This document shows positions 16,232 to 37,804 of a stretch of DNA of 64,000 bases, in pieces. Made by a program: the position numbers and the translations under genes. The notes below the pieces were generated by a model. It did not search any database and had not been told where the DNA came from. It saw nothing but the letters and a program-made list of their open reading frames with translations. The stretch is taken from positions 186,001 through 250,000 of IMG/VR virus record IMGVR_UViG_3300049460_000128; one strand, 5' to 3'. Every line of letters begins with the position of its first letter. Within the stretch, counting starts at the first letter, position 1.

Positions 16232-16459
16232 CTATTGAGTGAATGGTTCCATGTGGATCTTATCGGCCCACTTGAGACGAAACACGGCCATATCCTCTTC
16301 GTCGTCAAGCCATATCATCTGCTGATTATGGCCAAGTTTTGATGTGATGGATCCCACACGACCATCAAGACGAATCTCCGCAAGATGCGATTGGTATCGA
16401 GTGAAGCAATCGTGATAATTGCGCCATAGTGGCGACAAGATTATGTATGCGTAAGTCAT
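16232..16459 (-). CDS. FKLT-family small protein
   Basis: LDDEEDMAVFRLKW. Confidence 0.72.
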   Translation of the reverse strand: MTYAYIILSPLWRNYHDCFTRYQSHLAEIRLDGRVGSITSKLGHNQQMIWLDDEEDMAVFRLKWADKIHMEPFTQ

Positions 16460-16791
16460 AGGTGAGTCAATTTGAACAAGGCCGCAGCCTCTTCGGAGTC
16501 AAAGAATAAACGGGCATTCTCGATATCAATCTTCACCTGATTATCCTTACAAGTCTTATAGAAGTCTTCTCGTAGGAACCGACGGCGCACAGGCAAACCA
16601 CCGTCGTTCCATCCCGAAAGAACGGTTATGACACCAAGTGGGCAGGCCAATGAAGCCACGCCGGAAGTCGCGGCATCTTCTGGATCAACAATCTCACCGA
16701 ATATGAAACTCATATTGTAGCCTAAAAAGTACCGCGTCTGCTTCAGTCTCGAAGATAAAATACGCTGACGACATACCTTCGCCATATCCAA
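16456..16791 (-). CDS. FKLT-family small protein (start uncertain)
   Basis: FDSEEAAALFKLTHL. Confidence 0.75.
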   Translation of the reverse strand: MDMAKVCRQRILSSRLKQTRYFLGYNMSFIFGEIVDPEDAATSGVASLACPLGVITVLSGWNDGGLPVRRRFLREDFYKTCKDNQVKIDIENARLFFDSEEAAALFKLTHL

Positions 16792-16972
16792 TTTTCACCT
16801 CATCGTTGGTCTGCTTACGGGCCTCAGACATGGATTCAATGAGATCAAACAATGGACTTACCGTTGCGGGGTCGCGAGTGTAGAAGGTCAGGTGATAGCT
16901 AATTTCACCACAGTGATTTGATAGAATTCCAGATCGCTCATGTAGTCGATGAGCATTTGATGACCACGCCAT
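16694..16972 (-). CDS. FKLT-family small protein (start uncertain)
   Basis: FETEADAVLFRLQY. Confidence 0.72.
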   Translation of the reverse strand: MAWSSNAHRLHERSGILSNHCGEISYHLTFYTRDPATVSPLFDLIESMSEARKQTNDEVKIGYGEGMSSAYFIFETEADAVLFRLQYEFHIR

Positions 16973-17166
16973 AACGGGTGATCAGCCGTAGTGCTCAGAT
17001 GTTCAGGTGTCTTGGGCAAAAGCTCGTGCAAGACTATTGTGTGCAAGCCTGGGTTTTCTGGAAGAATCCAGTCGCACCAAGCTTCTGCTTCGTCTTCTTC
17101 TACATCGTATTTCTTTGCCGCGTATTCGATCAGATCGTCGGCTTCAACTCGTACATTATGGTGCAT
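16888..17166 (-). CDS. Hypothetical acidic protein embedded in the array (no motif)
   Basis: Collinear ORF. Confidence 0.6.
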   Translation of the reverse strand: MHHNVRVEADDLIEYAAKKYDVEEDEAEAWCDWILPENPGLHTIVLHELLPKTPEHLSTTADHPLWRGHQMLIDYMSDLEFYQITVVKLAIT

Positions 17167-17168
17167 GA

Positions 17169-17375
17169 TTACAGGTGGGTTAGTTTAAAAAGTGCTGCGG
17201 CATCTTCGGTTCTGAAAAACATCAAACCACGTTTGGTGTCATAGCTGATCTTGTGTTCACGCAGTAAAGCACCGAACTCAGCAGTCACATGTGACTGTTC
17301 TTTCCAGTCACTAGTGTAATAGTAGAAGATACGAAATTTGTGGGGAATTTCAACTTTAATCTTGGAACGTTTCAT
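17169..17375 (-). CDS. FKLT-family small protein
   Basis: FRTEDAAALFKLTHL. Confidence 0.8.
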   Translation of the reverse strand: MKRSKIKVEIPHKFRIFYYYTSDWKEQSHVTAEFGALLREHKISYDTKRGLMFFRTEDAAALFKLTHL

Positions 17376-17584
17376 AGGTATGTGAGTTTGAAAAGTGCTG
17401 CCTCTGCTTCATTCTGGAAGTCTATGTAATAGCATAGCTTGAAGTTGAATTGGCCATATTCTTCGTGTTTGGTTTTCACCTTAAAGCCAGCTGCTTCTAA
17501 TTTATCGAACCACGCATACTCGGCAAGGGCTGTCACACTCGAGACTGAGTATGCCATTCGATCAAGCAAAATTATTCTAACCAT
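17372..17584 (-). CDS. FKLT-family small protein
   Basis: FQNEAEAALFKLTYL. Confidence 0.8.
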   Translation of the reverse strand: MVRIILLDRMAYSVSSVTALAEYAWFDKLEAAGFKVKTKHEEYGQFNFKLCYYIDFQNEAEAALFKLTYL

Positions 17585-17765
17585 AGTGCGTTAACTTCCA
17601 AATGACTGCATCGGCTTCAGTTTCAAACTCCATCCAAATTTGTCGTCGACCATCCACTTCACCCCACCTGGGTTCATGGCCTTTACTTCGCCATTCTATC
17701 AGATCTCGAACGAAGGAATTATTGCGTGGCCTCAGTATAGCATCGTAAAGGATTACTCGTATCAT
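17577..17765 (-). CDS. FKLT-family small protein
   Basis: FETEADAVIWKLTHYG. Confidence 0.78.
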   Translation of the reverse strand: MIRVILYDAILRPRNNSFVRDLIEWRSKGHEPRWGEVDGRRQIWMEFETEADAVIWKLTHYG

Positions 17766-17959
17766 AGGAATTTCAATTTGAATATGGCAGCGTCATCGTC
17801 AGTATCAAAATCCACATAGTATCGATAGATGGCATACCGTGTGTCGTAGTTATATTGCACATCCGATCTAACCTCGAAACCAGCACTCGTTATTTGCGTC
17901 AGCAGTGTGCCCCATTGCTTGAAGTTGTATCGTGTTTGATCGAGTTCGATGTGAATCAT
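17762..17959 (-). CDS. FKLT-family small protein
   Basis: FDTDDDAAIFKLKFL. Confidence 0.8.
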   Translation of the reverse strand: MIHIELDQTRYNFKQWGTLLTQITSAGFEVRSDVQYNYDTRYAIYRYYVDFDTDDDAAIFKLKFL

Positions 17960-18174
17960 TTGACGAAGATTTCCGGATAGGTGAGTTTGAATATCGCAGC
18001 CGCTTCTTCACTACTGAAGACCACCTTGTATTTCTTGTATTTACGGCCGGTCTCATCCAGATACTCATCGAAGTCAAATTTCACTTCTTCTTTGATGAAG
18101 ACTTCTCGGGCAGCAAGCCAACGATCCTTGGTCCACAAATGGTCGATGTTGATGCCTACTGTCAAGATATTCAC
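17956..18174 (-). CDS. FKLT-family small protein
   Basis: FSSEEAAAIFKLTYP. Confidence 0.8.
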   Translation of the reverse strand: MNILTVGINIDHLWTKDRWLAAREVFIKEEVKFDFDEYLDETGRKYKKYKVVFSSEEAAAIFKLTYPEIFVK

Positions 18175-18473
18175 AGTACATTCAGCTTAAACAATGCCGC
18201 AGAAGCTTCGTCTGGGAACACCAGAGTCATACGTCGATTGTCGTTGATTGCTAGATGGGTACGATCAGTTAGATTATGTTTTTCCAAATATGCCTTGATT
18301 TCTGGCATTTTGAATTCCCAATGTGATGGGGTTCCCGGCCACACTTGTTTAGTGATACTTGCCGGATCGTATTCGTCATATACCAGTGCCGCTTTAAACA
18401 GGTGATAGGGGATAATAATAGGTACCATTCTAGCCTCATTAAGTTTGCCACATGATAGTATGGCACCACACAT
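18171..18473 (-). CDS. FKLT-family small protein (likely start ATG 18428)
   Basis: FPDEASAALFKLNVL. Confidence 0.75.
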   Translation of the reverse strand: MCGAILSCGKLNEARMVPIIIPYHLFKAALVYDEYDPASITKQVWPGTPSHWEFKMPEIKAYLEKHNLTDRTHLAINDNRRMTLVFPDEASAALFKLNVL

Positions 18474-18480
18474 AGGTAAA

Positions 18481-18690
18481 TTACATATGCGTCAACTTGA
18501 ACAAGGCAGCTTCAGTTTCATCAACGAACGGTATGTAGAAAAAACGTTTATCGGCCTCATCGTAATAGTTGACCATACATCCAAGTTTCTGATACTTAGA
18601 CGCCTGTGCGCGTAACCGCTCACGATGATCCAGTTCACTTTGTGGTGAATGATAACTGATTTTGGTGCTGCCAATTATGAGTTTGATCAT
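18481..18690 (-). CDS. FKLT-family small protein
   Basis: FVDETEAALFKLTHM. Confidence 0.8.
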   Translation of the reverse strand: MIKLIIGSTKISYHSPQSELDHRERLRAQASKYQKLGCMVNYYDEADKRFFYIPFVDETEAALFKLTHM

Positions 18691-18923
18691 AGATGAGTGA
18701 GCTTAAAGATTGCGGCGGTGGCATCATCCGAAAATCTAATCTTCAGTAAATGTGGTGCGGTCACTTCGCCATCACCAATAACAGTTCCACCCGCAGTCTT
18801 AATCAGTCGTATGGCGTCATTGGTGACGCCCCAGTACATGCAGTCGATGTACCAAGGGCTAACACTGTCTCGGGGTATAACTTCGATTAGCCATTGTTCT
18901 GGTACTGGAAGGTCGATCATCAA
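18687..18923 (-). CDS. FKLT-family small protein
   Basis: FSDDATAAIFKLTHL. Confidence 0.8.
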   Translation of the reverse strand: MMIDLPVPEQWLIEVIPRDSVSPWYIDCMYWGVTNDAIRLIKTAGGTVIGDGEVTAPHLLKIRFSDDATAAIFKLTHL

Positions 18924-19144
18924 TATGTCAATCTAAAAAGTACCGCTTCTTCTTCGGTTTTGAGGTACAGGTATGGTTCGTCAAATGGCTCGTCAACTTC
19001 AAAGTTTTCACCCAACAGTTCTTTGAGAATTGGTTTCGCATACTCAGATGGAAACTTTGCCAAAACACAATCATGGAAACATGGAGCCGATTTGATGTCA
19101 ATATCCCAACACCAAAATTTATCTGGCAACGGTACGCGAATCAT
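18920..19144 (-). CDS. FKLT-family small protein
   Basis: LKTEEEAVLFRLTY. Confidence 0.78.
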   Translation of the reverse strand: MIRVPLPDKFWCWDIDIKSAPCFHDCVLAKFPSEYAKPILKELLGENFEVDEPFDEPYLYLKTEEEAVLFRLTY

Positions 19145-19419
19145 TGGAATCGACCTGCAATAAGTTCTTCAGGGAGTTCGCTCGCATCGACGCCATATTG
19201 TAGCTTGAATACTGCTGCTTCTGCTATCTCATTATCTGGAAAGATGGCATACCAGACTGTTGGATCATCGCCTATGTATTTGGGCGAACAGTCATGTGCT
19301 ATTTTTGCCTCATCCAACTCTGCAATGATGACGTTACAACGGGCCAGACCCGCAGTAGCTTCCTCATATGTGGCACCAGGCTTGAATCTATTTTTGATGT
19401 GGAAGATGATTCGAATCAT
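19141..19419 (-). CDS. FKLT-family small protein
   Basis: FPDNEIAEAAVFKLQY. Confidence 0.72.
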   Translation of the reverse strand: MIRIIFHIKNRFKPGATYEEATAGLARCNVIIAELDEAKIAHDCSPKYIGDDPTVWYAIFPDNEIAEAAVFKLQYGVDASELPEELIAGRFQ

Positions 19420-19655
19420 AGGTGTGTGAGCTTAAAAATGGCTGCTTCGGACTCGGTGGCGAATTCACACCAGAAGATATACGAAATGCTTTTGTCATAT
19501 ATAAACGACGTTGGCAAATCCATCATGCACAGCTTTTTGTTGTCGGTTGGTCTAGCTTCGAGTTTGATGTTGTTATCTGTTAGCATTTGCAGAAATTCAA
19601 CCGTATTTTTGAAGGTGTTCATGAACACCTGGACCTTGATTGTTTGGAGTGCCAT
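19416..19655 (-). CDS. FKLT-family small protein
   Basis: FATESEAAIFKLTHL. Confidence 0.8.
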   Translation of the reverse strand: MALQTIKVQVFMNTFKNTVEFLQMLTDNNIKLEARPTDNKKLCMMDLPTSFIYDKSISYIFWCEFATESEAAIFKLTHL

Positions 19656-19909
19656 TACATGTAGGTGAGTTTGAAGATTGCTGCTTGTGTATCGTCGGCA
19701 AATACCACCACAACTTCAACATCATATTGCTCGTTGAGATACGAAAGCGAATAACCCTCGTCTTTGAGTTGGCGCTCAAGAACTGCACGACGTTCTTCTT
19801 CAATGATCCATTCAGATTTAGACCATATCTTCTCACGCATAAATGCGTACTTCAAATAGGAGTACAGGTAATGGCTTCTCATTGATGATGTCCGTATTTC
19901 AGTTTCCAC
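19655..19909 (-). CDS. FKLT-family small protein
   Basis: FADDTQAAIFKLTYM. Confidence 0.8.
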   Translation of the reverse strand: METEIRTSSMRSHYLYSYLKYAFMREKIWSKSEWIIEEERRAVLERQLKDEGYSLSYLNEQYDVEVVVVFADDTQAAIFKLTYM

Positions 19910-20148
19910 ATGACTGCTTCTTCATCACTGTTAAACACCAGATGGATATCCCAGTTAACTTTTTCTGGTTTCAACGTGTAGGCTTCAGCAGGCAATGGTT
20001 GTCTTGCGATAACCCAACCCGGGAAATCGAAACGTACACCAGTCATGTCGATGCCAATAGGTACCATTACGCGCTTGAACATGGAAGTGTACGTTGAGGG
20101 ATGAGTCACGTACTCTATCCACGAGTTTGGTACTCGTATTCTGGTCAT
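19879..20148 (-). CDS. FKLT-family small protein
   Basis: FNSDEEAVMWKLKY. Confidence 0.76.
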   Translation of the reverse strand: MTRIRVPNSWIEYVTHPSTYTSMFKRVMVPIGIDMTGVRFDFPGWVIARQPLPAEAYTLKPEKVNWDIHLVFNSDEEAVMWKLKYGHHQ

Positions 20149-20351
20149 AGGTGTGTCAACTTAAACATTGCGGCATCTTCTTCTGTATCGAATTCCATCC
20201 ATGCCTTTATCAAAATCGGGCGCATCATGAGTCCATTATATTCGGACTGACGTACGACTGGATGATTTTCGTTCTCCAACTTGTGTACACAGCGTATGGC
20301 CTCAACGGTAGATGGTGTGCCATACATGTCAAATAATAAAATCTTGATCAT
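20145..20351 (-). CDS. FKLT-family small protein
   Basis: FDTEEDAAMFKLTHL. Confidence 0.8.
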   Translation of the reverse strand: MIKILLFDMYGTPSTVEAIRCVHKLENENHPVVRQSEYNGLMMRPILIKAWMEFDTEEDAAMFKLTHL

Positions 20352-20557
20352 AGGTGCGTCAATTTGAACAATGCAGCTTCATCTTCGGTATCAAACCACA
20401 TGTAGATCCACGAGTCATCCATTGCATATTGATAGCCCAGACGAATGATCTTAACACCCATGGCATCTACTTTGGACCAATCACGCCGCATTGCTGGCAC
20501 CGCCGGGTCTTCTGGTAACTTGATGACATTTAGACGGATCATATTCTGAGCTTCCAT
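20348..20557 (-). CDS. FKLT-family small protein
   Basis: FDTEDEAALFKLTHL. Confidence 0.8.
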   Translation of the reverse strand: MEAQNMIRLNVIKLPEDPAVPAMRRDWSKVDAMGVKIIRLGYQYAMDDSWIYMWFDTEDEAALFKLTHL

Positions 20558-20739
20558 ATGGCGTATGCGGCCTCATTGGGGAATTCAATATACCATTTCA
20601 AATGACGTCCCACCTTTTCATACTTGAAAATACTGCCATCAAGCCGTGCTAAGTCGATTTGCTTTGAGACCAATTCATATCGTTCTTTAGTTACATCGTC
20701 TTCTTCTTCCGAATCTAACACCTTGATTGTTATGGTCAT
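20539..20739 (-). CDS. FKLT-family small protein
   Basis: FPNEAAYAIWKLRI. Confidence 0.72.
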   Translation of the reverse strand: MTITIKVLDSEEEDDVTKERYELVSKQIDLARLDGSIFKYEKVGRHLKWYIEFPNEAAYAIWKLRI

Positions 20740-20954
20740 AGGTGCGTGAGTTTAAAAAGCATAGCTTCCTCTTCGGTCTCAAATTCCCAATAAGCCTGAA
20801 CAAGCCCTTCTGTTTCTTCCCGCACGATTGGGCGTGGTAAGTCAGGATGAGCAGACACCCAGGTTGCAGCGGCGCCGCGTAACTTCAAATGGAGCATAAT
20901 AGTGTTTCCTGATACACCAATTGCGCCCAATTCACGAAAGATTACCTTAGCCAT
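20736..20954 (-). CDS. FKLT-family small protein
   Basis: FETEEEAMLFKLTHL. Confidence 0.8.
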   Translation of the reverse strand: MAKVIFRELGAIGVSGNTIMLHLKLRGAAATWVSAHPDLPRPIVREETEGLVQAYWEFETEEEAMLFKLTHL

Positions 20955-21177
20955 GCAATGACTCCCAATTGGTTAATTTGTACAGGGCAGCTTCTTCTTC
21001 AGTCTCAAACTCAACATAAGCTTGCACGAGACCCTGACCTTGGTTACGGGTGACTGGACGTTGCTGTGAAGGATTTTTGACGTGCCAGCGATTGTATTTC
21101 ATCATCAACCACATTTCAGTTGTGAGGGCCGCCGAGTTGGAATTGGTTTGACGTTCGTCAATGATCAATCGAAACAT
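20947..21177 (-). CDS. FKLT-family small protein
   Basis: FETEEEAALYKLTNW. Confidence 0.78.
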   Translation of the reverse strand: MFRLIIDERQTNSNSAALTTEMWLMMKYNRWHVKNPSQQRPVTRNQGQGLVQAYVEFETEEEAALYKLTNWESLHG

Positions 21178-21179
21178 GA

Positions 21180-21398
21180 TTACATGTGAGTGAGTTTGAA
21201 GAGGAGCGCCTCTTCATCGTTGGGAAATTCCCAATAGAGATAAATTTCTTCGTCTGTTTCGTCAATACTGAGTAGTGGCATCCAGTTAAATTGATTGCGC
21301 CAACCATAACTAATAAGCCTCACATCAAAGCGCTGCATGTCTTGCATAAAGTCATCGCCAGTACTGAGAGGCTCGCGGTATACTATTAGTCGATACAT
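21180..21398 (-). CDS. FKLT-family small protein
   Basis: FPNDEEALLFKLTHM. Confidence 0.8.
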   Translation of the reverse strand: MYRLIVYREPLSTGDDFMQDMQRFDVRLISYGWRNQFNWMPLLSIDETDEEIYLYWEFPNDEEALLFKLTHM

Positions 21399-21401
21399 GA
21401 T

Positions 21402-21423
21402 AAAAGGGGATTGCTCCCCTTCC
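21402..21423 (-). terminator. Terminator-like hairpin inside the array
   Basis: GGGGA-GCAA-TCCCC followed by CTTTT. Confidence 0.65.
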
Positions 21424-21453
21424 CTTACTTAATTGCTTCATTGAATAGTTACA

Positions 21454-21678
21454 TCAAGTAGCACCCGGCCACCTGTGACTCAATTTGTACATCATGGCTT
21501 CTTCCTCATCATCGAACAGAAAGTAAACACTGATGCCTTTCTTGCCGCCACGCATTTGAAGAAGTTCCTCGTCGAGCGCCGCACTGTTATTCCAGTTACT
21601 CATAAATTCCCACAAGATATCCCATGACCCAACAGGATACGGGTGAGGAACAAAGCGGACGACGAGTTCGTACATCAT
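21454..21678 (-). CDS. FKLT-family small protein
   Basis: FDDEEEAMMYKLSH. Confidence 0.75.
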   Translation of the reverse strand: MMYELVVRFVPHPYPVGSWDILWEFMSNWNNSAALDEELLQMRGGKKGISVYFLFDDEEEAMMYKLSHRWPGAT

Positions 21679-22052
21679 TGAGCCTTGAAGTCGGCCAGCA
21701 AACGCTCTTCAGCAGCCACACCAGTCAGACCGCGATACCACAAGGTAGCCGAGATAGCCACTGAGTCCCGTTGGATTTCATGCAAGACACGGTTAGCCAT
21801 TTCCAGGTTGTATGTGACCAATACTGGGGTCTGACCCGCGACACTGTCAGCAACCGCAGTAAAGCCATGGCCACTCAAAGCAGCCACGAGAGTGTCGAGG
21901 CTTTTGTGATTGCGTTCATCAACCTCAGGGTAGTGCATGTGGAGGATTGCCATCGGGGTGCCGCCCATCTCGCGAGCAAACGCCTGGAAGACGTCATTGT
22001 GGCTGAGGCCGATCATGTCGTCGGCGATGGTGCTAAAGTCTGGTGTATTCAT
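21675..22052 (-). CDS. Hypothetical protein (no motif)
   Basis: 125 aa ORF with ATGA overlap. Confidence 0.65.
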   Translation of the reverse strand: MNTPDFSTIADDMIGLSHNDVFQAFAREMGGTPMAILHMHYPEVDERNHKSLDTLVAALSGHGFTAVADSVAGQTPVLVTYNLEMANRVLHEIQRDSVAISATLWYRGLTGVAAEERLLADFKAQ

Positions 22053-22085
22053 TTTATTGGTATGCTATGTGTTTAAATTGCGAAT

Positions 22086-22367
22086 TTATTCAACGTTGGT
22101 TTTCATATCGTTAACGAAGCTATAACGCCGCAATGCCGTGATGGTGTCGTCATACGTCAATCGAAATACGACAAGCTCGGATTCGGTATCAAATTCCACA
22201 TGGTAGTGTTCAATCACGTTATAATGACTATAGCCACCTTTGGACGGGTGGATTTCTTCAGACACATGCCCCACCTTATATCCAAGTGACTCCAGCATGG
22301 CAATGAATGCCAACACCTCTTGATTACTACCACGACATGAATAGCTGTGAAACTGATACTGAATCAT
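22086..22367 (-). CDS. FKLT-family small protein
   Basis: FDTESELVVFRLTY. Confidence 0.72.
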   Translation of the reverse strand: MIQYQFHSYSCRGSNQEVLAFIAMLESLGYKVGHVSEEIHPSKGGYSHYNVIEHYHVEFDTESELVVFRLTYDDTITALRRYSFVNDMKTNVE

Positions 22368-30140: not shown

Positions 30141-30613
30141 TATTTGTCTTTGTGTGCGCGGTGAACAAATCTAGGAAAATCCGTTTCACCTAGTGGGTCA
30201 TAGTAGTAGTCATGCAGGTCTTGGTTCAATTGAGCAAACTCATCGGACCATACCTGACAAATGTGCATGGTATGATTTGCCACGCCATTCGTGGGCGCAT
30301 CAACCTGCATGTAGTAGAGGATAGACTGTCCCACTTTACTTTGCAATTTAGACTGCTCCAATTCTGCCAACGCAGGATCCATCTTTGCCCAAGTGGCTGC
30401 ACGCCGATACTCAATCATGCTGTTGATTGCTTCGTGTGTGGCCGGTTTGGTGCGAGCCATCTGTTCGAGGAAGTATTGATTCAAATCGTGATGCATATTA
30501 GCCATTAAAAGGAAGAGGGGAAAGTGAACGCTCAGAACAGAAAGCCAATTTGAATAGAGTAGCATCGTCACTAGTTGTGAACATAAAGTAACTGTTGACA
30601 TTATACCAATCAT
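30140..30613 (-). CDS. Hypothetical protein (start uncertain)
   Basis: ORF overlaps the upstream gene; true start probably downstream. Confidence 0.5.
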   Translation of the reverse strand: MIGIMSTVTLCSQLVTMLLYSNWLSVLSVHFPLFLLMANMHHDLNQYFLEQMARTKPATHEAINSMIEYRRAATWAKMDPALAELEQSKLQSKVGQSILYYMQVDAPTNGVANHTMHICQVWSDEFAQLNQDLHDYYYDPLGETDFPRFVHRAHKDK

Positions 30614-30824
30614 TCACTTCAAAATTGGCAATGCACCATTCCTCTGCTTCGCGGCGCTGTCTGATATCAAGGATTGACATCTCTATAAATCGCCCATAGT
30701 AATGAGTCATCTCATACTTGGATGGAATATGCTGACCTGTTTTGCCATAGTAGCGATCCATGAATTTGCGGACAGGCTCGCCTGCAATCTCACTCAATAC
30801 TTCGTAGTGTTCGTTCAAACTCAT
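30498..30824 (-). CDS. FKLT-family protein (second cluster)
   Basis: FTTSDDATLFKLAF. Confidence 0.7.
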   Translation of the reverse strand: MSLNEHYEVLSEIAGEPVRKFMDRYYGKTGQHIPSKYEMTHYYGRFIEMSILDIRQRREAEEWCIANFEVNDWYNVNSYFMFTTSDDATLFKLAFCSERSLSPLPFNG

Positions 30825-31186
30825 TTGTCAGCCCAGGTTAATTTGTACAAGACAGCATCATCCATATTGACGAACACGTAGCCATACATCGCATTGTTGA
30901 AGTCGTGCTTTTTGTCAAGTAAGGGGATGAACTTGTATGTTTTTACTCCCTTGGATTGTATCCACTCCTTGCACTCTGGTGTCCGCAATTGACGAATAAC
31001 ATCAGCCAACGGCATTAGTACCAGAGTGTGATCTGCATGCCACTTATACGTTTGTGGATCAACGACCACGTAGCCACATTCATCCATTGCCGGATCTGCC
31101 AAGTCATAGTTGTTTCCAAACCAGACATGCGGGTCGCAACCTTGCAGTTTGCATTTTTGATTTATTTCTTGCTGAACTTGTTCCAT
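30821..31186 (-). CDS. FKLT-family protein (second cluster)
   Basis: FVNMDDAVLYKLTW. Confidence 0.72.
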   Translation of the reverse strand: MEQVQQEINQKCKLQGCDPHVWFGNNYDLADPAMDECGYVVVDPQTYKWHADHTLVLMPLADVIRQLRTPECKEWIQSKGVKTYKFIPLLDKKHDFNNAMYGYVFVNMDDAVLYKLTWADK

Positions 31187-31722
31187 AGCATCAAATCGAA
31201 GTCAGCTGGAGTCATATTCACTTTCTTGGCTTCTGCCAAGAAAGCTTGCTCCAATACTGGATATTGTTTCGGGCTGGGCGTGCCGGTTGGTACATCATAG
31301 CCAAGCGTTCCCAGGTACTTTGTGATGTGGCGATCTAACACCGCGATGTTTTGATTTGGGCGACTGTGGATCAAAAAGAACCTTGCTGTTTTGTCACCCA
31401 CACCCGTTATGGCTTTCAGCCCGTCAACATCAACCGTGCGCAAATTCAATGCAACACTTTGAGCAAAGCCTTGTGTCAAACGAGTATATTGCCCCAGTCG
31501 TGCTTCTTTCAAATTCGCCGCCAAGGTATCTTTGCTCATCATAACCCGAATACGATCAAATGGCGAACCTGATGTTTCAATCAACAGGAACTTTTCCAAT
31601 GCCCTAGCTTGCGTCCTTGCGGTCTTACCAGCAACTACCTGACAGAACAGCCAATACAATTCTAACTCGGCATCAGTCCTCGTGTAATTGGTTACGATAG
31701 TTGGATCAACAAGTAAATTCAT
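31162..31722 (-). CDS. HhH-GPD DNA glycosylase-like (Ogg2/8-oxoguanine glycosylase-like)
   Basis: HhH LKAITGVGDKTARFFL with a Lys; AVLDRHI with the conserved Asp. Confidence 0.75.
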   Translation of the reverse strand: MNLLVDPTIVTNYTRTDAELELYWLFCQVVAGKTARTQARALEKFLLIETSGSPFDRIRVMMSKDTLAANLKEARLGQYTRLTQGFAQSVALNLRTVDVDGLKAITGVGDKTARFFLIHSRPNQNIAVLDRHITKYLGTLGYDVPTGTPSPKQYPVLEQAFLAEAKKVNMTPADFDLMLWNKFSKK

Positions 31723-32147
31723 TAACGACGCCCATTGTCAAATGCACGACGTGTGATGTCGTTCATGGTCTTGAGATCATGGATAGACATATTGACTTCA
31801 CCCAGGTAGCCGATGATTGAGCGAATGAAAACCACAATATGTGGCTCATGATCGGGCATTGTTTCGAGTTCCTTGAAGGCGTCTTGGAACGACGGATAAA
31901 CGATTTTAGAGTCTTCCTGCTCCGCAACCTCACGAGCGATGTCAATAAGCTTTTCCATGACGTCCTCGCCATAATACCAGCGCATTGCACCCAACAGATC
32001 AGACATCTCAATCAAAGCCATGATGACGCAGAACTGTTCAAATGCGTCCATGCACTCAAGGTATTCTTCTCGAATCTTGGAGAATTCCCCCAAGACGCCT
32101 TTTTCGATTACACGAATATGGTAACCAGGATTTTCTTCTTTGCTCAT
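31722..32147 (-). CDS. MazG-like all-alpha nucleotide pyrophosphohydrolase
   Basis: KIREEYLECMDA ... LIEMSDLL matches the EExxE...ExxD metal motif. Confidence 0.6.
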   Translation of the reverse strand: MSKEENPGYHIRVIEKGVLGEFSKIREEYLECMDAFEQFCVIMALIEMSDLLGAMRWYYGEDVMEKLIDIAREVAEQEDSKIVYPSFQDAFKELETMPDHEPHIVVFIRSIIGYLGEVNMSIHDLKTMNDITRRAFDNGRR

Positions 32148-32530
32148 ATATCTGAATAGGTTAAACGAAACATTACGGCATCTGCCAGATCATCAAAGCC
32201 AAGCAGGTAACCACCTGAGATTAAAGATCGCGGCGATGCCATTTGAGTTACTGCATAACGACGAGCCGTGATATTACCAACTGTCATAATATCCGATGTT
32301 ACAAGACCAAACCATTTTGTCGCTGGAGTATCTCTACGTAAGGTCAAACGCTTTACGCCACTGTTGAGCAACACAAAGGTTTGGCACTGGTGCTCCAACA
32401 ATTCGTCATACATGCTGGGCTTCATCCAGAATAATACGCCCGGAATATTGATGTCACCATAGGTTGATACGCGCTCGTCAGTCACGATACACTGTATATC
32501 AACACCTGGAAGGGTTACGGTTATTGCCAT
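32144..32530 (-). CDS. FKLT-family protein (second cluster)
   Basis: FDDLADAVMFRLTY. Confidence 0.72.
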   Translation of the reverse strand: MAITVTLPGVDIQCIVTDERVSTYGDINIPGVLFWMKPSMYDELLEHQCQTFVLLNSGVKRLTLRRDTPATKWFGLVTSDIMTVGNITARRYAVTQMASPRSLISGGYLLGFDDLADAVMFRLTYSDI

Positions 32531-32856
32531 GTTAGTTTGAACATCGTTGCTACTGAAAGGTCATTGAACAGAAACAACATGTGGGGCGTATAATCGCCCA
32601 AGTAGATGTTGCCATTGGAGATGATATGAATAGGCACAGACGCATATGGACATGGCATTGGGTCAGACCAAGATTCCACAGTCCAATCCTCATATGCTTC
32701 ACGTGTGATGATGACGCCAATTTCCCAATCGTACAACGTTTTGTCAGTGAAGTGTGAAAACCACTTGCAAGTGGAGAACCCGTCATTTTCCGTCTTACGC
32801 GAACGAGTGGTCCAGATTGGTTCACTAACGCCTGCGGGCTTAAAGATCATGACCAC
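32521..32856 (-). CDS. FKLT-family protein (second cluster)
   Basis: FNDLSVATMFKLTWQ. Confidence 0.72.
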   Translation of the reverse strand: MVMIFKPAGVSEPIWTTRSRKTENDGFSTCKWFSHFTDKTLYDWEIGVIITREAYEDWTVESWSDPMPCPYASVPIHIISNGNIYLGDYTPHMLFLFNDLSVATMFKLTWQ

Positions 32857-33230
32857 CTCAACTTGAAAAGTGCCGCAATGTCTTCACGTTCAAACACAAA
32901 GATACTATGGATATCATTTGAACTACTAGCCAGATTGATAGCATGCACCAGTTCATACTCGCCAGGATCATCAATGCCGAGATTATTGTGTGTGGTGATA
33001 TGTTCCTTCAATTTGGTGGTGGTTTTCGATGAAACCAGCACAGCATAGCCATCCGTCAGGCTGATGGATTTAGTCACAGTGAACCAGTGACTATCGAGTG
33101 CCGCAGCCGAATTGAACGCAGATAGGTCAGCATCGAACCATATCGCACCGTCAAGGCCTTTTAATTGTATTTGCATGATGAATTGGTAGATTAGGTGCCA
33201 TAGTATGGCACGCCAAACTGGTTGCCACAA
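32847..33230 (-). CDS. FKLT-family protein (second cluster; likely start ATG 33176)
   Basis: FEREDIAALFKLRWS. Confidence 0.72.
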   Translation of the reverse strand: MWQPVWRAILWHLIYQFIMQIQLKGLDGAIWFDADLSAFNSAAALDSHWFTVTKSISLTDGYAVLVSSKTTTKLKEHITTHNNLGIDDPGEYELVHAINLASSSNDIHSIFVFEREDIAALFKLRWS

Positions 33231-33241
33231 TAATACCTGAA

Positions 33242-33583
33242 CTATAGCCAGGTAAGCTTGAACATCACGGCATCTTCCAGCGCCCTAAAACCAAACAATG
33301 TTAAGCATTGCACTCTAGAATTTTTGCCAACTACATACCACACTGGCGTTTTAGTGACCGGATAGCCAATTTCTGATAGAAATTCATCCCAAGCGGTAGG
33401 GGTTTTGAACTTTAGGGTGGCAGATGGCACCAGGATGTACTGTGTATTTTGCGAATTTATAAGTGGCAAAAACTTGTTACCATCAATAACGTATTTCGTT
33501 TGATCATCTATAATTCGCAGAAATGACAAATTGTCAGACAGAATGTGAATAGGATGGGGCACGCCCTTGAGATTAACTATCAT
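33242..33583 (-). CDS. FKLT-family protein (second cluster)
   Basis: FRALEDAVMFKLTWL. Confidence 0.74.
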   Translation of the reverse strand: MIVNLKGVPHPIHILSDNLSFLRIIDDQTKYVIDGNKFLPLINSQNTQYILVPSATLKFKTPTAWDEFLSEIGYPVTKTPVWYVVGKNSRVQCLTLFGFRALEDAVMFKLTWL

Positions 33584-33906
33584 GGATAGGTCAACTTGAA
33601 CAAAACGGCTTGAGTTTCATCTTTGAAGCCAAACATCATAACGGCATCAAGCTCTCGCCCATTTTCGACCGGATACACGGGGCCCATGATCACTCGGGAA
33701 AAGTCCGGATTGTTAACTATGTCAAGCGAAATGACACGAGAATGCTGATACGGACGTATCAAACAATGCACACAATCCGCGTAGACATTTTTCATGAATG
33801 GCGAACGATATACATCAGTTGAGTTACGGATACCGTTGAATGATACAGGGCCTATGCCTGGTAGAATTACTTGCATGAATACTCCTTTGTTGTCAGTATA
33901 AAGCAA
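33580..33906 (-). CDS. FKLT-family protein (second cluster)
   Basis: FKDETQAVLFKLTYP. Confidence 0.74.
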   Translation of the reverse strand: MLYTDNKGVFMQVILPGIGPVSFNGIRNSTDVYRSPFMKNVYADCVHCLIRPYQHSRVISLDIVNNPDFSRVIMGPVYPVENGRELDAVMMFGFKDETQAVLFKLTYP

Positions 33907-33986: not shown

Positions 33987-34733
33987 TTAACGACGTCGTG
34001 CTGGAAGGATATAAGCATAGGTTGCATTCTCAGTAGCTACACTGATTTGCATTGCACCTTTGCTCGTCACATTCACGGAGTAGTCATTGCCGTCTGCCAT
34101 TTTCAGAATCGACAGGAACTGTTGGATTGGCCACAGCAGTTCGCCTTTCAGCTCGCCAGTGATCTCAGTAGCGAAGACCATCTGGGCACGGTGGGTTGCT
34201 GAACCTTCATCGCCGATTGCCAGTACAACATTGCTGTCTTTGGTTTTCACCGAGAAGAACTGCTCGCCTTGCGAGTACAGGCCAGCCAGCGCCGCAAACT
34301 CTTGGATCTTGCTCTTGGTTGGAACGAACGAAATGTCCCATTTGATGTCCGCAACCAGCGGTTGCTCAGGTACCAGATTGCCCGACATCAGGCGGAAATT
34401 GGAACCCATACCGTTTTCGTCACGGAATTCAAACTCTTCTGGAACGCTTTTGCCGCCCAGGTCACGACGTTTAACGTTGAAGGTCGCAGCTTCAGTTTGA
34501 TAGCTGGAGAAGTTCAGCAGACCAGTCAGCAGCGGCAGCGAGCTAACACCAAAGTCGCCGATCAGCGACTCTTGAGTTTCTGCCAGTTTGGCCTTGATGA
34601 TAACGGTCTTTTCGCCATCAACTGCTTCGATCTTGGTTTCTTCAGCTGAACCAGTTACTTTGATGGTGTCGATAAAGCCCAGACCACCAATTTTCTTCAT
34701 CACTTCTTTGAGTACAGTTTGCATATTTGTCAT
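33987..34733 (-). CDS. Putative sliding clamp (gp45-like processivity factor)
   Basis: 248 aa, alternating beta/alpha pattern, C-terminal YAYILPA, directly downstream of the polymerase; assignment by size, context and recall. Confidence 0.65.
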   Translation of the reverse strand: MTNMQTVLKEVMKKIGGLGFIDTIKVTGSAEETKIEAVDGEKTVIIKAKLAETQESLIGDFGVSSLPLLTGLLNFSSYQTEAATFNVKRRDLGGKSVPEEFEFRDENGMGSNFRLMSGNLVPEQPLVADIKWDISFVPTKSKIQEFAALAGLYSQGEQFFSVKTKDSNVVLAIGDEGSATHRAQMVFATEITGELKGELLWPIQQFLSILKMADGNDYSVNVTSKGAMQISVATENATYAYILPARRR

Positions 34734-34825
34734 ACCTTTGTTGTTATTGTTTTCTTGTTGTGCCAGGTGCAGCTCAAGTGTTTGTATTCTACATGAGCTG
34801 CCCTTGATAGCAAATTAAATCTGGC

Positions 34826-37804
34826 TTACCACTTGAACAAATCGTTACTTACATCTTCGTTGGTCAAGGTCAAGTCCCACTTCAAAACACCCAAGAGGTT
34901 GTTCAATTTGAAGTCGATGATTGTCTCTTCCATCGTAGTGTGATCAAACGGCAATTCTTTGAACCACTGCGGCAAGTGCGGCTCGTCAATCGGATAAGCG
35001 ATTGAGGTCATACCCATCGGATTTGGCTTCAGTTTGCAAACAATGATCTTCTGACCATCAGTCAATGACATGGAGAAATTGTCGTTGTGCATCTTACGCA
35101 ATTTCATGTAATTGATCGAGGCCAAAACGTGCCCAGCAATGATGTCTCGCTTCTTCTTTTCATTGGCTTTGTGGCCAGCGTAAATGTCCAGCTTACCAGC
35201 ACTTGCATTATTGACCATGTTCGTTTTCTCAGTCAAGCCATTGCACTTCTTAGGCGAACCTTTTTCCCAACCTGGTTTGTTCCTGAACTCTTTCCTGAAC
35301 ACTTTGATCATGTCAAAGATTTCATCCTGGGACTTACCAGTCAGCGTTGCCATCAGCACGTCTTCCAAGAAGTCTTGCATGTATTGTGGCGTGTCTGAAC
35401 GTTTCAGGTCCAAGCCCATAACTTTCAGCTTACCAGGTTTGCCGTCAATGTCGTAGCGCTCACCCTCTTTGTCGTACATGAGGACCGCGTACTTCTTCTT
35501 CTTGATGAACAAGCCCTTAGAAGCGACGAGTTCGCGACCTGCTGCGATAATTCCACCGCGCTCGATGCCAGTGTTGAAACCCTTGTGCATGAACTCTGGG
35601 AAGCTCTCATTGACTGCATCACCAATGCCATCATACAGTTGAATAATGTTGTCACGAGTGAATTCAAAACTTGCATATTCAGGACGCTTCTGCCATACAG
35701 CTTTCGCACTGAAGTAACTGGAGTCAGTATCCGCGTAGATGATTGCCTCACCCTTGAAGTCATACTCACCTGTGATGATCTCGTTAATCTTCGAGTTCAT
35801 GTGTTTGGCAATCGAACGACCAGTCAACGTTACTGATTGACCAATACGTTTGTCGTAGAACTTCATGCTGGAGTTCAACAACGCACCATACAAACTGTTA
35901 AGCAGAATCTTACGCGCTTGCTGACGTTGATTCCAGAATGTCTTCCAATACTTGGCATCCTTTTCATCATTAGCAGTAATGCGCCCATCTTCGATCACAA
36001 AATTGTGATTGACCATTACCTGAGCTACAACCTTGGCATCTTTCTTGTACAGGGCTTTCGTGAACGCGCCCGAGTCCAAATCATTTGCGGTCAGGGTTGG
36101 CAGCAATCCATTTACTTCAGAGATGAAAGCACTTGGATCAGCATCGAAAGTCTTTGCCAAGTTGGTGCTCTTATCAGTCACATATGCGAAAGTTTTCTCG
36201 CGTGCCTGCATCTCTTTACGCTGACGATACCACGTCGCCAGCAAGCTTGGAATCACGCCAACTTTGTCAGTGCGGAAGATCGTGCCGTTTGCAGTAATGC
36301 ACAGTGGGCGACCTTCGTGGAAGATGAAGTTGTACAGTTCATCAGCCCTAAATACCTTAGTTGTGCCATCTTCAAAGTCAACCGTAATTGCATCCTTGGT
36401 ACGAGCCATAACCTTGTCGTATTCCAGAGTAGAGAATACATTTTCCCACAGTTCAGGCTTTGGTACTTTGTTAGCAATCCGCATTGCGATCATGGCTTCA
36501 GTATCCAGCGGACGAATGTGACCATACAACGTCTCAGGACTCATGTTCAATGCGCGCAGCGTTGATGGGTACAGGGAGTTAATGTCGCAGCAACCAATCT
36601 CATCCTGAATACCAGTCTTCGGCTTGGCCACGTATGCGCCAACGGCCGCATTGCTCAAGTCTTCTTCGTCATCATCGTCCGAATCAAATTCTTCGTCGAA
36701 CTCGTCATCAACTACTTCGGCGGCTTTACGGTCAGGGATGACCATACCCAGGTCATGTGCTTCCAGCATGATCGAGTTTTCGATCAAGGCCACGGAGCCA
36801 TTAGTGGTCTTCAACAGCACGCAGTTGGTGTGCGCAATCTGATTGGCCAGTTCGATGAATTTCTTCTTGGCATCAATCTTAACCATCAGCATAACGTCTT
36901 GACGGTTGTATTCAAGGAAGCGTTCAAAGTCCTTCTTGTACAAGTCGTCTAGCGTACCTTCGTAGACGGTCTTGTTTTCTTTCACCTCAATCTCGCCAAC
37001 GAAGTCAAGACGATATGAGTGCAACTGCTGTGGATTGTGCTTCTGATACAGTTCCAGATAGTCAAGGTGAATACGACCCACTGTATCGTAGGTGATACTT
37101 TTCTTCTTGAACTTGATGTACTCACGACGACGTGGCAATTGATTCCACAAACAGAAGCGACGAGTCTCATCTTTGCTGATCACTCGAGTGATTCGATTCA
37201 CCAAATATGGTACGTCGAAGCCGGTTGAGTTCCAACCAGTAATCACATCTGAGTCTTCAATGATATCCAGGAATGCTTTCAGCATATCACCTTCGTCTTC
37301 GAACAAGAAGCTGTTCTCAAACTTGTCATTGATACGCTGTGCTTCTTCGATCGCCATACCTGGAGGTGGCATGCACAGCGTTACCAATTGATTAGCCCAA
37401 CTCAAGTATACGGAAATTGCGGTCACGTTATTGAACGGGTCTTCGGTTGGTGCGAATCCTCGTTTAGTATCAAACGCGACCTCAATGTCGAAAAATGCGA
37501 TATTGAGTGCTGGTGCTTCAATGTTTCGGTAGTTTTCTTCCAGACTGCGGAAGACAGGATTGACATCGCTTTCAAACAAACGCTTGTTTGCTAGGATGTT
37601 TTTTTCACGGTTAAATGCTTTACCGTTATTGGTACTATACTTGCTGAGGGCATCACCAAAAATACTAACATGGTTGCCTCGTGTATCAGGGTAATACAGT
37701 GTGTAGTTACATGGCAGAGTCTTGTGAACTCGTTCTCCATTTACACGTTCAACGACCAGGATCTGATCTTTCTCCCGGACGTGCATCGCATCAATATAAC
37801 TCAT
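34826..37804 (-). CDS. polB: Family B DNA polymerase with 3'-5' exonuclease
   Basis: ExoI FFDIEV, ExoII GWNSTGFD, ExoIII YNRQD; motif A DINSLYPS, motif B KILLNSLYG, motif C YADTDS, KKKY. Confidence 0.96.
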   Translation of the reverse strand: MSYIDAMHVREKDQILVVERVNGERVHKTLPCNYTLYYPDTRGNHVSIFGDALSKYSTNNGKAFNREKNILANKRLFESDVNPVFRSLEENYRNIEAPALNIAFFDIEVAFDTKRGFAPTEDPFNNVTAISVYLSWANQLVTLCMPPPGMAIEEAQRINDKFENSFLFEDEGDMLKAFLDIIEDSDVITGWNSTGFDVPYLVNRITRVISKDETRRFCLWNQLPRRREYIKFKKKSITYDTVGRIHLDYLELYQKHNPQQLHSYRLDFVGEIEVKENKTVYEGTLDDLYKKDFERFLEYNRQDVMLMVKIDAKKKFIELANQIAHTNCVLLKTTNGSVALIENSIMLEAHDLGMVIPDRKAAEVVDDEFDEEFDSDDDDEEDLSNAAVGAYVAKPKTGIQDEIGCCDINSLYPSTLRALNMSPETLYGHIRPLDTEAMIAMRIANKVPKPELWENVFSTLEYDKVMARTKDAITVDFEDGTTKVFRADELYNFIFHEGRPLCITANGTIFRTDKVGVIPSLLATWYRQRKEMQAREKTFAYVTDKSTNLAKTFDADPSAFISEVNGLLPTLTANDLDSGAFTKALYKKDAKVVAQVMVNHNFVIEDGRITANDEKDAKYWKTFWNQRQQARKILLNSLYGALLNSSMKFYDKRIGQSVTLTGRSIAKHMNSKINEIITGEYDFKGEAIIYADTDSSYFSAKAVWQKRPEYASFEFTRDNIIQLYDGIGDAVNESFPEFMHKGFNTGIERGGIIAAGRELVASKGLFIKKKKYAVLMYDKEGERYDIDGKPGKLKVMGLDLKRSDTPQYMQDFLEDVLMATLTGKSQDEIFDMIKVFRKEFRNKPGWEKGSPKKCNGLTEKTNMVNNASAGKLDIYAGHKANEKKKRDIIAGHVLASINYMKLRKMHNDNFSMSLTDGQKIIVCKLKPNPMGMTSIAYPIDEPHLPQWFKELPFDHTTMEETIIDFKLNNLLGVLKWDLTLTNEDVSNDLFKW

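What the first reader, a model, noticed from the sequence alone, without database searches (positions are those of the whole stretch)
30498..33906. Second, separate cluster of seven longer FKLT-family genes interleaved with the glycosylase and MazG-like genes
Seen: seven ORFs of 108-128 aa end in the same motif but with a distinct flavour: KLTW, KLRW, KLTWQ, KLTWL. They sit 8 kb from the main array, between the polymerase/clamp genes and the deazaguanine cluster, and flank the HhH-GPD and MazG-like genes. Inference: an independently expanded subfamily, possibly co-regulated with nucleotide-metabolism genes.
Basis: partly seen in the sequence, partly recalled or inferred. Interest (0 to 1): 0.6.

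Follow-up and report, generated by a model that had tools for sequence, protein, structure and literature searches.

The report
Seven long copies of phage mini-protein family
Seven real genes next to the DNA-replication genes of a 297-kb jumbo phage are older, longer-type copies of an undescribed small-protein family that this phage carries about 56 times. The family's function is unknown, and the seven are not a newly invented subfamily.

Summary
Seven minus-strand ORFs (30498-33906) surround an HhH glycosylase-like gene and a 141-aa gene, and all carry the C-terminal F-x-acidic-A-x-x-F-K-L-T-aromatic motif. Four end in W, two in Y and one in F. A family HMM links them to the 37-gene main array 8 kb away and to 12 further copies elsewhere in the 296,594-bp phage genome.

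The family is absent from Pfam and PHROGs. It recurs in related jumbo phages: at least 30 matches in Sinorhizobium phage Phosso, and several uncultured genomes. AlphaFold gives a confident beta-alpha-beta-beta-alpha domain. The seven add a poorly modelled N-terminal extension of about 45 aa.

The "independent expansion" reading is only partly right. The seven do differ from the FKLTHL-type core of the main array: all seven prefer a W-type profile by 6-21 bits. But the W/F/Y type is the lineage-wide form, and the short H type is restricted to this phage's clade. The seven share at most 30% identity, form no supported clade and have no close orthologues. They sit in variable slots of a conserved replication/modification backbone that hold none to two family-like genes between the clamp-like and HhH genes in relatives.

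Function is inferred only: non-enzymatic binding modules, probably for host takeover or anti-defence.

The parts
33580..33876 (-). Family gene S1, 98 aa from ATG 33876 (longest ORF reaches TTG 33906); ends FKLTYP
   Evidence: AAGGAG 7 nt before the ATG; W-type profile +5.9 bits
33242..33583 (-). Family gene S2, 113 aa; ends FKLTWL. It has an N-terminal extension of about 45 aa followed by the beta-alpha-beta-beta-alpha domain (residues 48-113).
   Evidence: AF2 pLDDT 70 overall, 73-88 in the domain; +12.5 bits
32847..33176 (-). Family gene S3, 109 aa from ATG 33176 (longest ORF reaches TTG 33230); ends FKLRWS
   Evidence: the public gene call is the 109-aa form; +16.1 bits
32521..32850 (-). 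Family gene S4, 109 aa from ATG 32850 (longest ORF reaches GTG 32856); ends FKLTWQ
   Evidence: +21.0 bits
32144..32530 (-). Family gene S5, 128 aa; ends FRLTYSDI
   Evidence: P0038; +21.0 bits
31722..32147 (-). 141-aa gene interleaved in the cluster.
   Evidence: PHROG 6408, unknown function, 8e-26. No Pfam, PDB or NCBIfam support. No related locus was found in viral contigs, and it is absent from the syntenic slot of relatives.
31162..31722 (-). HhH glycosylase-like gene, 186 aa, part of the conserved backbone
   Evidence: PHROG 11575 9e-62; Pfam Ogg-HhH 9e-6, below cut-off; PDB 9o00 8-oxoguanine glycosylase/AP lyase 1.6e-7; NCBIfam N-glycosylase/DNA lyase 4.5e-11, below cut-off; 39-73% identical homologues in relatives
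30821..31186 (-). Family gene S6, 121 aa; ends YKLTWADK
   Evidence: P0002, E 5.4e-9; +13.2 bits
30498..30824 (-). Family gene S7, 108 aa; FKLAF motif followed by a 12-aa tail. Its best outside matches are FKLAY/FKLAF genes that lie between polymerase and clamp-like gene in two relatives.
   Evidence: 28% identity, 5e-5 to L005:6646-6942; +11.1 bits
33907..33953 (-). Terminator-like hairpin (15-bp perfect stem) followed by a U-run, between the clamp-like gene and S1
   Evidence: -30.9 kcal/mol, z -6.9, 0 of 200 shuffles as stable; inverted repeat I2
12093..22367 (-). Main tandem array of the same family: 37 HMM-positive genes, mostly 62-106 aa, with an FKLTHL/FKLTYL-type core
33987..37804 (-). 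Upstream backbone: B-family DNA polymerase (34826-37804, C-terminus ...DLFKW) and a 248-aa clamp-like gene (33987-34733)

Best explanation
Shown:
- The seven ORFs are genuine protein-coding members of a large, undescribed small-protein family specific to a lineage of jumbo phages.
- The family domain is about 65-75 aa and is predicted to fold as beta1-alpha1-beta2-beta3-alpha2. Its hallmark is the end of beta3 plus alpha2: F, an acidic run, then A-x-[LMI]-F-K-L-T-[H/Y/W]-[L/M].
- The constraint acts on the protein, not on the DNA.
- The seven belong to the general, longer W/F/Y type. This is the form found throughout the lineage, both dispersed and in arrays. The seven carry an extra N-terminal extension of about 45 aa.
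- They are old, highly diverged copies. They occupy two variable insertion slots of an otherwise conserved backbone: polymerase, clamp-like gene, HhH glycosylase, T-fold-like gene, glycosyltransferase-like gene, FolE, QueE.
- They are packed head-to-tail with overlapping stop/start codons, behind a strong hairpin that follows the clamp-like gene.

Inferred:
- They are expressed as one polycistronic unit together with the HhH gene and the 141-aa gene.
- They act as non-enzymatic binding modules. The conserved tail helix and F/L core hold the fold, and the hypervariable loops, beta2-beta3 region and N-terminal extensions give each copy its own target.
- The most likely role is host takeover or counter-defence. 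This would explain why copy number and content differ between even close relatives.
For: Family link and genuineness:
- HMM E-values for the seven are 2e-7 to 5e-12.
- The exhaustive profile search finds 58 foreign proteins with the same tail, and no Pfam or PHROG family matches.
- Synonymous codons at the invariant motif are fully scrambled: Ala GCA 15, GCT 13, GCG 9, GCC 9, and the invariant Leu uses all six codons.
- Ten orthologous W-type pairs from two related uncultured phages have dN/dS of 0 to 0.62.

Fold:
- AF2 gives pLDDT 89 for a 68-aa member. The same domain appears at residues 48-113 of the 113-aa cluster gene.
- Only generic alpha/beta-sandwich resemblances were found, best Z 4.9.

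Subtype:
- All 7 cluster genes and all 10 dispersed copies tested prefer the W-type profile.
- Tails in relatives are W 43, F 25, Y 9, H 2.
- W-type arrays interleaved with unrelated genes exist in L055/L056.

Age of the copies:
- Identity among the seven is at most about 30%.
- The tree is unresolved.
- A word-based search of 5.8 billion clusters finds no close orthologue.

Variable slots.

Operon-like packing and hairpin.

Lack of enzymatic or nucleic-acid-binding signature:
- No family or fusion hits.
- Median pI about 5.5, against 5.9 for long ORFs of the genome.
Against: - No direct evidence of expression.
- No binding partner is known.
- The arms-race or anti-defence role is inferred only from copy-number plasticity, small size and diversity.
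- A conserved tail could instead mark a shared partner or a targeting signal.
- The AF2 model of the long form is only moderately confident (pLDDT 70, N-terminus about 50).
- The subtype split rests on profiles, not on a resolved phylogeny.
Confidence: 0.6

Rival explanations
1. One reading: the seven are a separately and locally expanded subfamily whose function is tied to the neighbouring nucleotide-metabolism or DNA-modification genes and which is co-regulated with them.
For: - They share strand and overlapping junctions with the HhH and 141-aa genes.
- Five of them share an N-terminal M-x-[IV]-x-L-x-G-[VIL] start. It is also seen in the two genes at the same slot of relative G001.
- Relatives keep none to two family-like genes next to the clamp-like gene, or between polymerase and clamp-like gene, so this position is recurrent.
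- The label 'S' is more clustered on the tree than shuffled labels: 3 changes against a mean of 6.7, matched by 0 of 500 shuffles.
- The AU test does not reject one clade (p 0.26).
Against: - No supported clade, and one member pairs with a main-array gene at 92/89 support.
- Best pairwise hits are mixed among the groups.
- The same W type is dispersed elsewhere in this genome and dominates other phages in unrelated contexts, such as next to peptidase M29 and a Cys-tRNA synthetase.
- The closest relative by clamp-like protein identity (L005, 76%) shows no family gene, and no HhH homologue, downstream of the clamp-like gene.
Confidence: 0.15
2. The proteins modulate the replisome. The C-terminal ...LFKLTW tail mimics the polymerase's own C-terminal ...DLFKW tail, which is the presumed clamp-binding peptide by analogy with T4 and RB69 gp43 (from my own knowledge). 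It would then compete for the clamp-like protein.
For: - The polymerase of this phage and of five relatives ends in [DE]LF[KST]W.
- Family genes recur immediately beside the clamp-like gene in several relatives.
Against: - In the AF2 models the tail is an integral helix of the folded core, not a free peptide.
- Fifty-six copies, mostly far from replication genes, argue against a single shared replisome target.
- No family gene follows the clamp-like gene in Phosso.
- The identity of the 248-aa protein as a clamp is itself unverified.
- The complex prediction gave no answer either way and is not counted.
Confidence: 0.07
3. The conserved terminus is a sorting signal, for example for packaging into the capsid and ejection into the host. 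This would be analogous in logic to the capsid-targeting leader of T4 internal proteins (from my own knowledge). The variable rest would be the cargo.
For: - A short conserved terminal motif on otherwise hypervariable small proteins in plastic tandem arrays.
- The N-terminal M-I-R-I-I-I-P start is also conserved in many short copies.
Against: - The motif is part of a folded domain.
- No protease-site-like pattern was tested or seen.
- The arrays lie in replication and nucleotide-metabolism regions, not in the head module.
- No virion proteome is available.
Confidence: 0.08
4. The ORFs are decaying or non-functional duplicates, or the repeated element is really a DNA-level signal (promoter, terminator or recombination site) that happens to be translated.
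For: - Extreme divergence among copies.
- No close orthologues of the seven.
- Some dN/dS values in relatives are fairly high, 0.5-0.6.
Against: - Every frame is open, and the genes are tightly packed with overlapping starts.
- Codons at the motif are scrambled while the amino acids are kept.
- All measured dN/dS values are below 1.
- The fold is confidently predicted from the family alignment.
- DNA repeats in the region are only 65-83% identical over 14-40 nt, and one checked by eye (D1) coincides with the motif codons.
Confidence: 0.03

Closest known systems
The main FKLTHL-type tandem array of the same genome (window 12093-22367)
   Same: - Same HMM family.
- Same beta-alpha-beta-beta-alpha domain.
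- Same F/acidic/A-x-x-F-K-L-T tail.
- Same strand and the same overlapping-junction packing.
   Different: - The cluster genes are longer, median 109 against 78 aa.
- They carry an N-terminal extension.
- They have W/Y/F instead of H after K-L-T.
- They score 6-21 bits better on a W-type profile than on the H-type profile.
Hypothetical proteins of Sinorhizobium phage Phosso (PV764938.1) and of uncultured jumbo-phage genomes (IMG/VR UViG_3300017565_000001, UViG_3300044693_000177, UViG_3300026274_000007; Logan contigs L055/L056)
   Same: - Same family and same W/F/Y-type tails (FRLTWC, FKLRWS, FKLTWL and others).
- Similar lengths of 75-135 aa.
- Tandem arrays interleaved with unrelated genes.
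- All annotated only as hypothetical.
   Different: - No one-to-one orthologues of the seven.
- The clamp-like to HhH slot holds none to two family-like genes in these relatives instead of five, and I saw none between HhH and the next backbone gene.
- Agrobacterium phage Atu_ph07 lacks the family altogether, although its polymerase is 49% identical.
Ferredoxin-like / RRM-like two-layer alpha/beta sandwiches (SPOR domain 6i0n, papillomavirus E2 DNA-binding domain 6bus, RRMs)
   Same: - Order of secondary-structure elements, beta-alpha-beta-beta-alpha.
- An aromatic residue at the end of beta3 followed by an acidic helix N-cap.
   Different: - The fourth strand is missing.
- Best Z is 4.9 and Foldseek E is at least 0.4, so the match is only a common arrangement.
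- No sequence relation was found, and the proteins are mildly acidic.
Hyperplastic accessory-gene regions of T4-like phages and tandem 'accordion' paralogue families of large viruses (recalled from general knowledge, not tested)
   Same: Small, fast-diverging, non-essential-looking genes in variable slots between conserved core genes. Copy number differs between close relatives.
   Different: - Here a single domain family supplies about 56 copies, roughly 4-5% of the genome.
- No member has an assigned function.

Membership tests
FKL-tail small-protein family of this phage lineage (undescribed; defined here by the main array) | Significant match to a profile built from the main array | tested here: met
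   All seven hit the iterated HMM at E 2.4e-7 to 5e-12. Five appear in the search of 1.84 billion proteins with profile A1 at E 5e-9 to 4e-5. The seven were among the seeds of both profiles, so these matches are partly by construction. The W-type profile built without them scores them 23-30 bits.
FKL-tail small-protein family of this phage lineage | C-terminal F / acidic run / A-x-[LMI]-[FY]-[KR]-L-x-aromatic motif at or near the C-terminus | tested here: met
   Present in all seven. In 30498-30824 it is followed by 12 extra residues.
FKL-tail small-protein family of this phage lineage | beta1-alpha1-beta2-beta3-alpha2 domain | tested here: met
   AF2 gives pLDDT 89 for a short member. The same element order is seen at residues 48-113 of the 113-aa cluster gene, with block pLDDT 73-88. 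Only one of the seven was modelled.
W/F/Y-type (long) subtype versus H-type (short) subtype | Higher score on a W-type profile than on an H-type profile, both built without the seven | tested here: met
   7 of 7 prefer W-type by 5.9-21.0 bits. Controls: dispersed copies 10 of 10, non-H main-array copies 7 of 21.
Cluster-specific clade ('independently expanded subfamily') | The seven form one supported clade apart from the main array | tested here: inconclusive
   No branch of the 56-row tree is well supported. The seven need 3 label changes. AU test p 0.26. Only 75 columns were available.
MazG / all-alpha NTP pyrophosphohydrolase (for the interleaved 141-aa gene) | Match to a MazG-type profile or to a solved MazG | tested here: not met
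   No Pfam hit at E up to 1. No relevant PDB hit at E up to 10. No relevant NCBIfam hit. The only match is PHROG 6408, of unknown function. Its fold was not predicted.
HhH-GPD / Ogg2-type DNA glycosylase (for the interleaved 186-aa gene) | Helix-hairpin-helix plus the catalytic C-terminal region matching Ogg-type glycosylases | tested here: inconclusive
   Residues 102-184 match PDB 9o00 at 1.6e-7, Pfam Ogg-HhH at 9e-6 with 25.7 bits against a cut-off of 27, and NCBIfam NF002305 at 4.5e-11, below cut-off. Catalytic residues were not checked.
RRM / SPOR / ferredoxin-like domains | Four-stranded beta-alpha-beta-beta-alpha-beta fold with significant structural or sequence match | tested here: not met
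   The fourth strand is absent. Foldseek E is at least 0.44. Best Z is 4.9, within the range of unrelated matches. No Pfam hit.
Clamp-binding (PIP-like) tail proteins | Predicted or measured binding of the C-terminal tail to the clamp-like protein | tested here: inconclusive
   The complex prediction returned 'no answer' with a score of 0.02. That is no evidence either way.

The most novel reading that the evidence does not exclude
The FKL-tail domain is a new phage-specific fold family used as a diversifiable binder scaffold. Its two ancient subtypes have different jobs. The W-type copies embedded in the replication/DNA-modification module would tune or protect the replisome and the modified-base pathway. 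The H-type array would be a clade-specific arsenal against host defences.
Probability: 0.12. Interest if true: 0.75.

Novelty: new member of a known kind. Interest (0 to 1): 0.4.

Why it matters
The cluster itself is a modest finding. It does show that one undescribed 70-aa domain accounts for about 56 genes in a 297-kb phage. It also accounts for dozens of 'hypothetical proteins' in Sinorhizobium phage Phosso and in many uncultured jumbo phages.

Three results give this dark matter a handle for annotation and experiment:
- The family has a confidently predicted fold.
- It has two recognisable subtypes, a long W/F/Y type and a short H type.
- Both subtypes amplify in tandem.

Phosso is a cultured system in which the function can be tested.

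Tried and rejected
- Megablast of the region against 50,697 phage records found no match.
- Pfam and PHROGs scans of the seven and of 39 family members found nothing credible.
- Word-based searches of 5.8 billion protein clusters, with the family alignment and with the seven, returned only this genome's own proteins.
- Fold searches gave only weak, generic alpha/beta-sandwich matches. I tried Foldseek PDB, VIA-align wide and the ESM Atlas by shape and by features.
- I looked for informative domain fusions in the longer family proteins and found no Pfam domain.
- Complex prediction of the clamp-like protein with the 113-aa cluster gene returned 'no answer' (score 0.02). This is not evidence for or against binding.
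I did not pursue it by other means.
- The TTGCTTTATACT box downstream of the hairpin was tested as a possible recurring promoter. It does not recur above chance.
- The sigma-70 and terminator consensus scans were not enriched over shuffles, and the terminator scan missed the long hairpin.
- Two literature searches on Phosso and Sinorhizobium jumbo phages and on jumbo-phage multigene families found no description of this family.
- My initial idea that the M-x-V-x-L-x-G start of five cluster genes is beta1 of the domain was rejected by the AF2 model. The model places beta1 at residues 48-53.

Full report
**What is there.** The window is bases 186,001-250,000 of a single-contig virus record of 296,594 bp. 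Its B-family DNA polymerase (34826-37804, minus strand) is 52% identical to that of Sinorhizobium phage Phosso, 49% to Agrobacterium phage Atu_ph07 and about 42% to RaK2-like Klebsiella phages. This is therefore a jumbo phage of the wider T4-like assemblage.

At the finding's coordinates there are nine co-oriented minus-strand genes. Five family genes lie at 33580-33906, 33242-33583, 32847-33230, 32521-32856 and 32144-32530. They are followed by a 141-aa gene (31722-32147) and a 186-aa HhH gene (31162-31722). Two more family genes follow at 30821-31186 and 30498-30824.

The tails are FKLTYP, FKLTWL, FKLRWS, FKLTWQ, FRLTYSDI, YKLTWADK and FKLAF plus 12 residues. The 'W flavour' therefore holds for four of the seven.

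Three longest-ORF starts (TTG or GTG) are probably wrong:
- An AAGGAG box sits 7 nt before ATG 33876.
- The public gene call for the third gene is the 109-aa form from ATG 33176.
- ATG 32850 gives the usual 4-nt overlap with the preceding stop.

**Is it more than chance, and is it linked to the main array?** A tail pattern search finds 34 minus-strand ORFs in the window against one on the plus strand.

An HMM seeded on these and iterated on all ORFs of the genome converges on 56 members:
- 37 in the main array (window 12093-22367);
- the seven in this cluster;
- 12 dispersed copies.

The seven match at E 2e-7 to 5e-12, over most of the 78-position model and not only the tail. At the invariant motif the synonymous codons are completely mixed: four Ala codons are used about equally, and all six Leu codons appear at the invariant Leu. 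The constraint therefore acts on the protein, and the copies are old. DNA repeats inside the cluster are short and weak.

**What the family is.** No Pfam or PHROG model matches any of 39 members. A word-indexed search of 5.8 billion clusters sees only the genome's own proteins.

The exhaustive profile search of 1.84 billion representatives finds 89 proteins at E of 1e-3 or better. Of these, 31 are the genome's own, 58 are foreign with the same tail, and one is a false positive. The foreign proteins come from short metagenomic contigs that are themselves arrays and from longer phage contigs.

The profile also matches other genomes:
- 30 places in the cultured Sinorhizobium phage Phosso, all annotated as hypothetical;
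- 24, 23 and 9 places in three uncultured relatives;
- none in Atu_ph07.

AlphaFold2 with the family alignment gives a confident model (pLDDT 89) with the element order beta-alpha-beta-beta-alpha. Structure searches return only generic two-layer sandwiches. These include SPOR, papillomavirus E2 DNA-binding domain, RRM and ferredoxin-like folds. The scores (Z at most 4.9, Foldseek E at least 0.44) are typical of unrelated matches.

The 113-aa cluster gene has the same domain at residues 48-113, preceded by a poorly modelled extension of about 45 aa. Members are mildly acidic, and no informative fusion exists. Ten orthologous pairs between two related uncultured phages have dN/dS of 0 to 0.62. 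The family therefore encodes proteins under purifying selection.

**Is the cluster a separate subfamily?**

- *Pairwise comparison.* The seven share at most about 30% identity, mostly in the tail. Their best hits are spread over main-array, dispersed and cluster genes.
- *Tree.* A maximum-likelihood tree of the 56 copies (75 columns) has no well-supported branch. The seven need three label changes, which is fewer than for shuffled labels. One of them pairs with a main-array gene. An AU test does not reject their monophyly (p 0.26). Phylogeny therefore cannot decide.
- *Subtype profiles.* These are more informative. I built profiles from H-ending and W-ending members, excluding the seven. All seven prefer the W-type profile by 5.9-21 bits. 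So do all ten dispersed copies tested, while only 7 of 21 non-H main-array genes do.
- *Other genomes.* Across Phosso and three uncultured relatives the residue after K-L-T is W 43, F 25, Y 9 and H 2. In other phages the W type forms its own arrays of 15 or more genes of 85-120 aa, interleaved with a peptidase M29 and a Cys-tRNA synthetase. The short H/Y type forms arrays in contigs such as L001.
- *Length.* W-ending members are longer than H-ending ones, both in this genome and among the foreign proteins.

Together these results point to two old subtypes. The cluster belongs to the widespread long one, and the clade-restricted expansion is the short H type.

**Synteny.** Relatives found through the HhH and clamp-like proteins keep the backbone. 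Its order is polymerase, clamp-like gene, HhH glycosylase, a T-fold-like 135-aa gene, a glycosyltransferase-like gene, FolE, a phosphoribosyltransferase and QueE.

The slots between backbone genes vary:
- After the clamp-like gene there are two family-like genes in the 424-kb relative. Their starts resemble those of the five here.
- There is one degenerate copy in each of two other relatives.
- There is none in the closest relative fragment or in Phosso.
- Two relatives carry an FKLAY/FKLAF gene between the polymerase and the clamp-like gene. This gene is the best outside match of window gene 30498-30824.
- The 141-aa gene was not found in relatives.

The five-plus-two arrangement is thus a local gain in hypervariable slots, built from very diverged copies.

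**Regulation.** The clamp-like gene is followed by a 15-bp perfect hairpin and a U-run (-30.9 kcal/mol, z -6.9). From S1 to the T-fold-like gene the junctions overlap or are within 3 nt, except for one 65-nt gap. Co-expression with the HhH and 141-aa genes is therefore plausible, but it is inferred. No transcript data could be obtained.

**Neighbour labels.**
- The HhH gene resembles Ogg2-type N-glycosylase/DNA lyases in its C-terminal half.
- 'MazG-like' is not supported by any library.
- 'Clamp' rests on the Phosso annotation alone.
- FolE and a QueE-like radical SAM enzyme support a 7-deazaguanine-type pathway. I did not verify the remaining steps.

**Mechanism.** Nothing enzymatic or nucleic-acid-binding is detectable. 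The conserved positions are mainly hydrophobic core positions of beta3 and alpha2, plus an acidic helix cap and one Lys. The rest of the protein is hypervariable.

I take the family to be a stable mini-scaffold whose variable surfaces bind different targets. It would be amplified and turned over under selection from hosts. This is an inference, at roughly 0.3-0.4 for the functional part.

I considered a replisome-mimic idea, because the polymerase ends in ...DLFKW. The complex prediction gave no answer, and the tail is buried in a folded helix.

**Verdict.** The cluster is an ordinary, though informative, part of a larger and undescribed multigene family.

Noticed in passing
window 12093-22367 and the whole genome (G000:C1 17688, 169600, 183512, 184466, 253325-270209, 288264): The family has about 56 HMM-positive copies in the 296.6-kb genome, not 45. 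Twelve lie outside the two clusters, including a plus-strand group at genome coordinates 253-270 kb.
   Followed up: partly
main array, e.g. window 13083-21398: In H-type genes the terminal Leu is almost always CTA (14 of 16) followed by TGA. The resulting CTATGA contains the ATG of the next gene, a 4-nt overlap. The last residue of the motif is therefore co-constrained by translational coupling.
   Followed up: partly
window 34826-37804 (C-terminus of the polymerase) and L005, L006, L008, L011, L012: The polymerase and its homologues in five relatives end in [DE]LF[KST]W. This is a candidate clamp-binding tail that superficially resembles the family tail. It was not tested beyond one inconclusive complex prediction with a family protein.
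   Followed up: partly
window 22650-23393 (+): A plus-strand HNH-endonuclease-like gene (PHROG 681/559, about 5e-8) sits between the main array and the QueE-like gene. It is the only opposite-strand gene in this stretch and is probably a mobile insertion.
   Followed up: no
window 33907-33953 (-): A very stable 15-bp hairpin with a U-run lies directly after the clamp-like gene. The simple terminator scan missed it.
   Followed up: yes
P0010, P0022, P0053, P0055, P0078, P0081; window 12093-12629: Two-domain versions exist in metagenomic phages, with the family domain twice in one 139-245-aa protein. The 178-aa first gene of the main array also has two motif matches.
   Followed up: no
L005:8556-8921: In the closest relative fragment the homologue of the 135-aa T-fold-like gene (window 29457-29864) is split into two ORFs (64 and 46 aa). 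This may be a frameshift or an assembly error.
   Followed up: no
L014 (Atu_ph07) against L013/L015-L029 (Phosso): Atu_ph07 has no detectable family member, although its polymerase is 49% identical. Phosso has at least 30. The family was therefore gained or lost within this jumbo-phage group.
   Followed up: partly
L055 against L056 (positions 4600-6000): Two closely related uncultured phages differ in the number of near-identical 89-91-aa W-type genes in one array. This points to ongoing tandem gain and loss.
   Followed up: partly
window 30140-30613 (-): The 157-aa longest ORF overlaps family gene S7 by 116 nt. Homologues in relatives are 109 aa and start at M-x-D-F-N-E. The real start is therefore probably ATG 30496, giving 118 aa.
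   Followed up: yes
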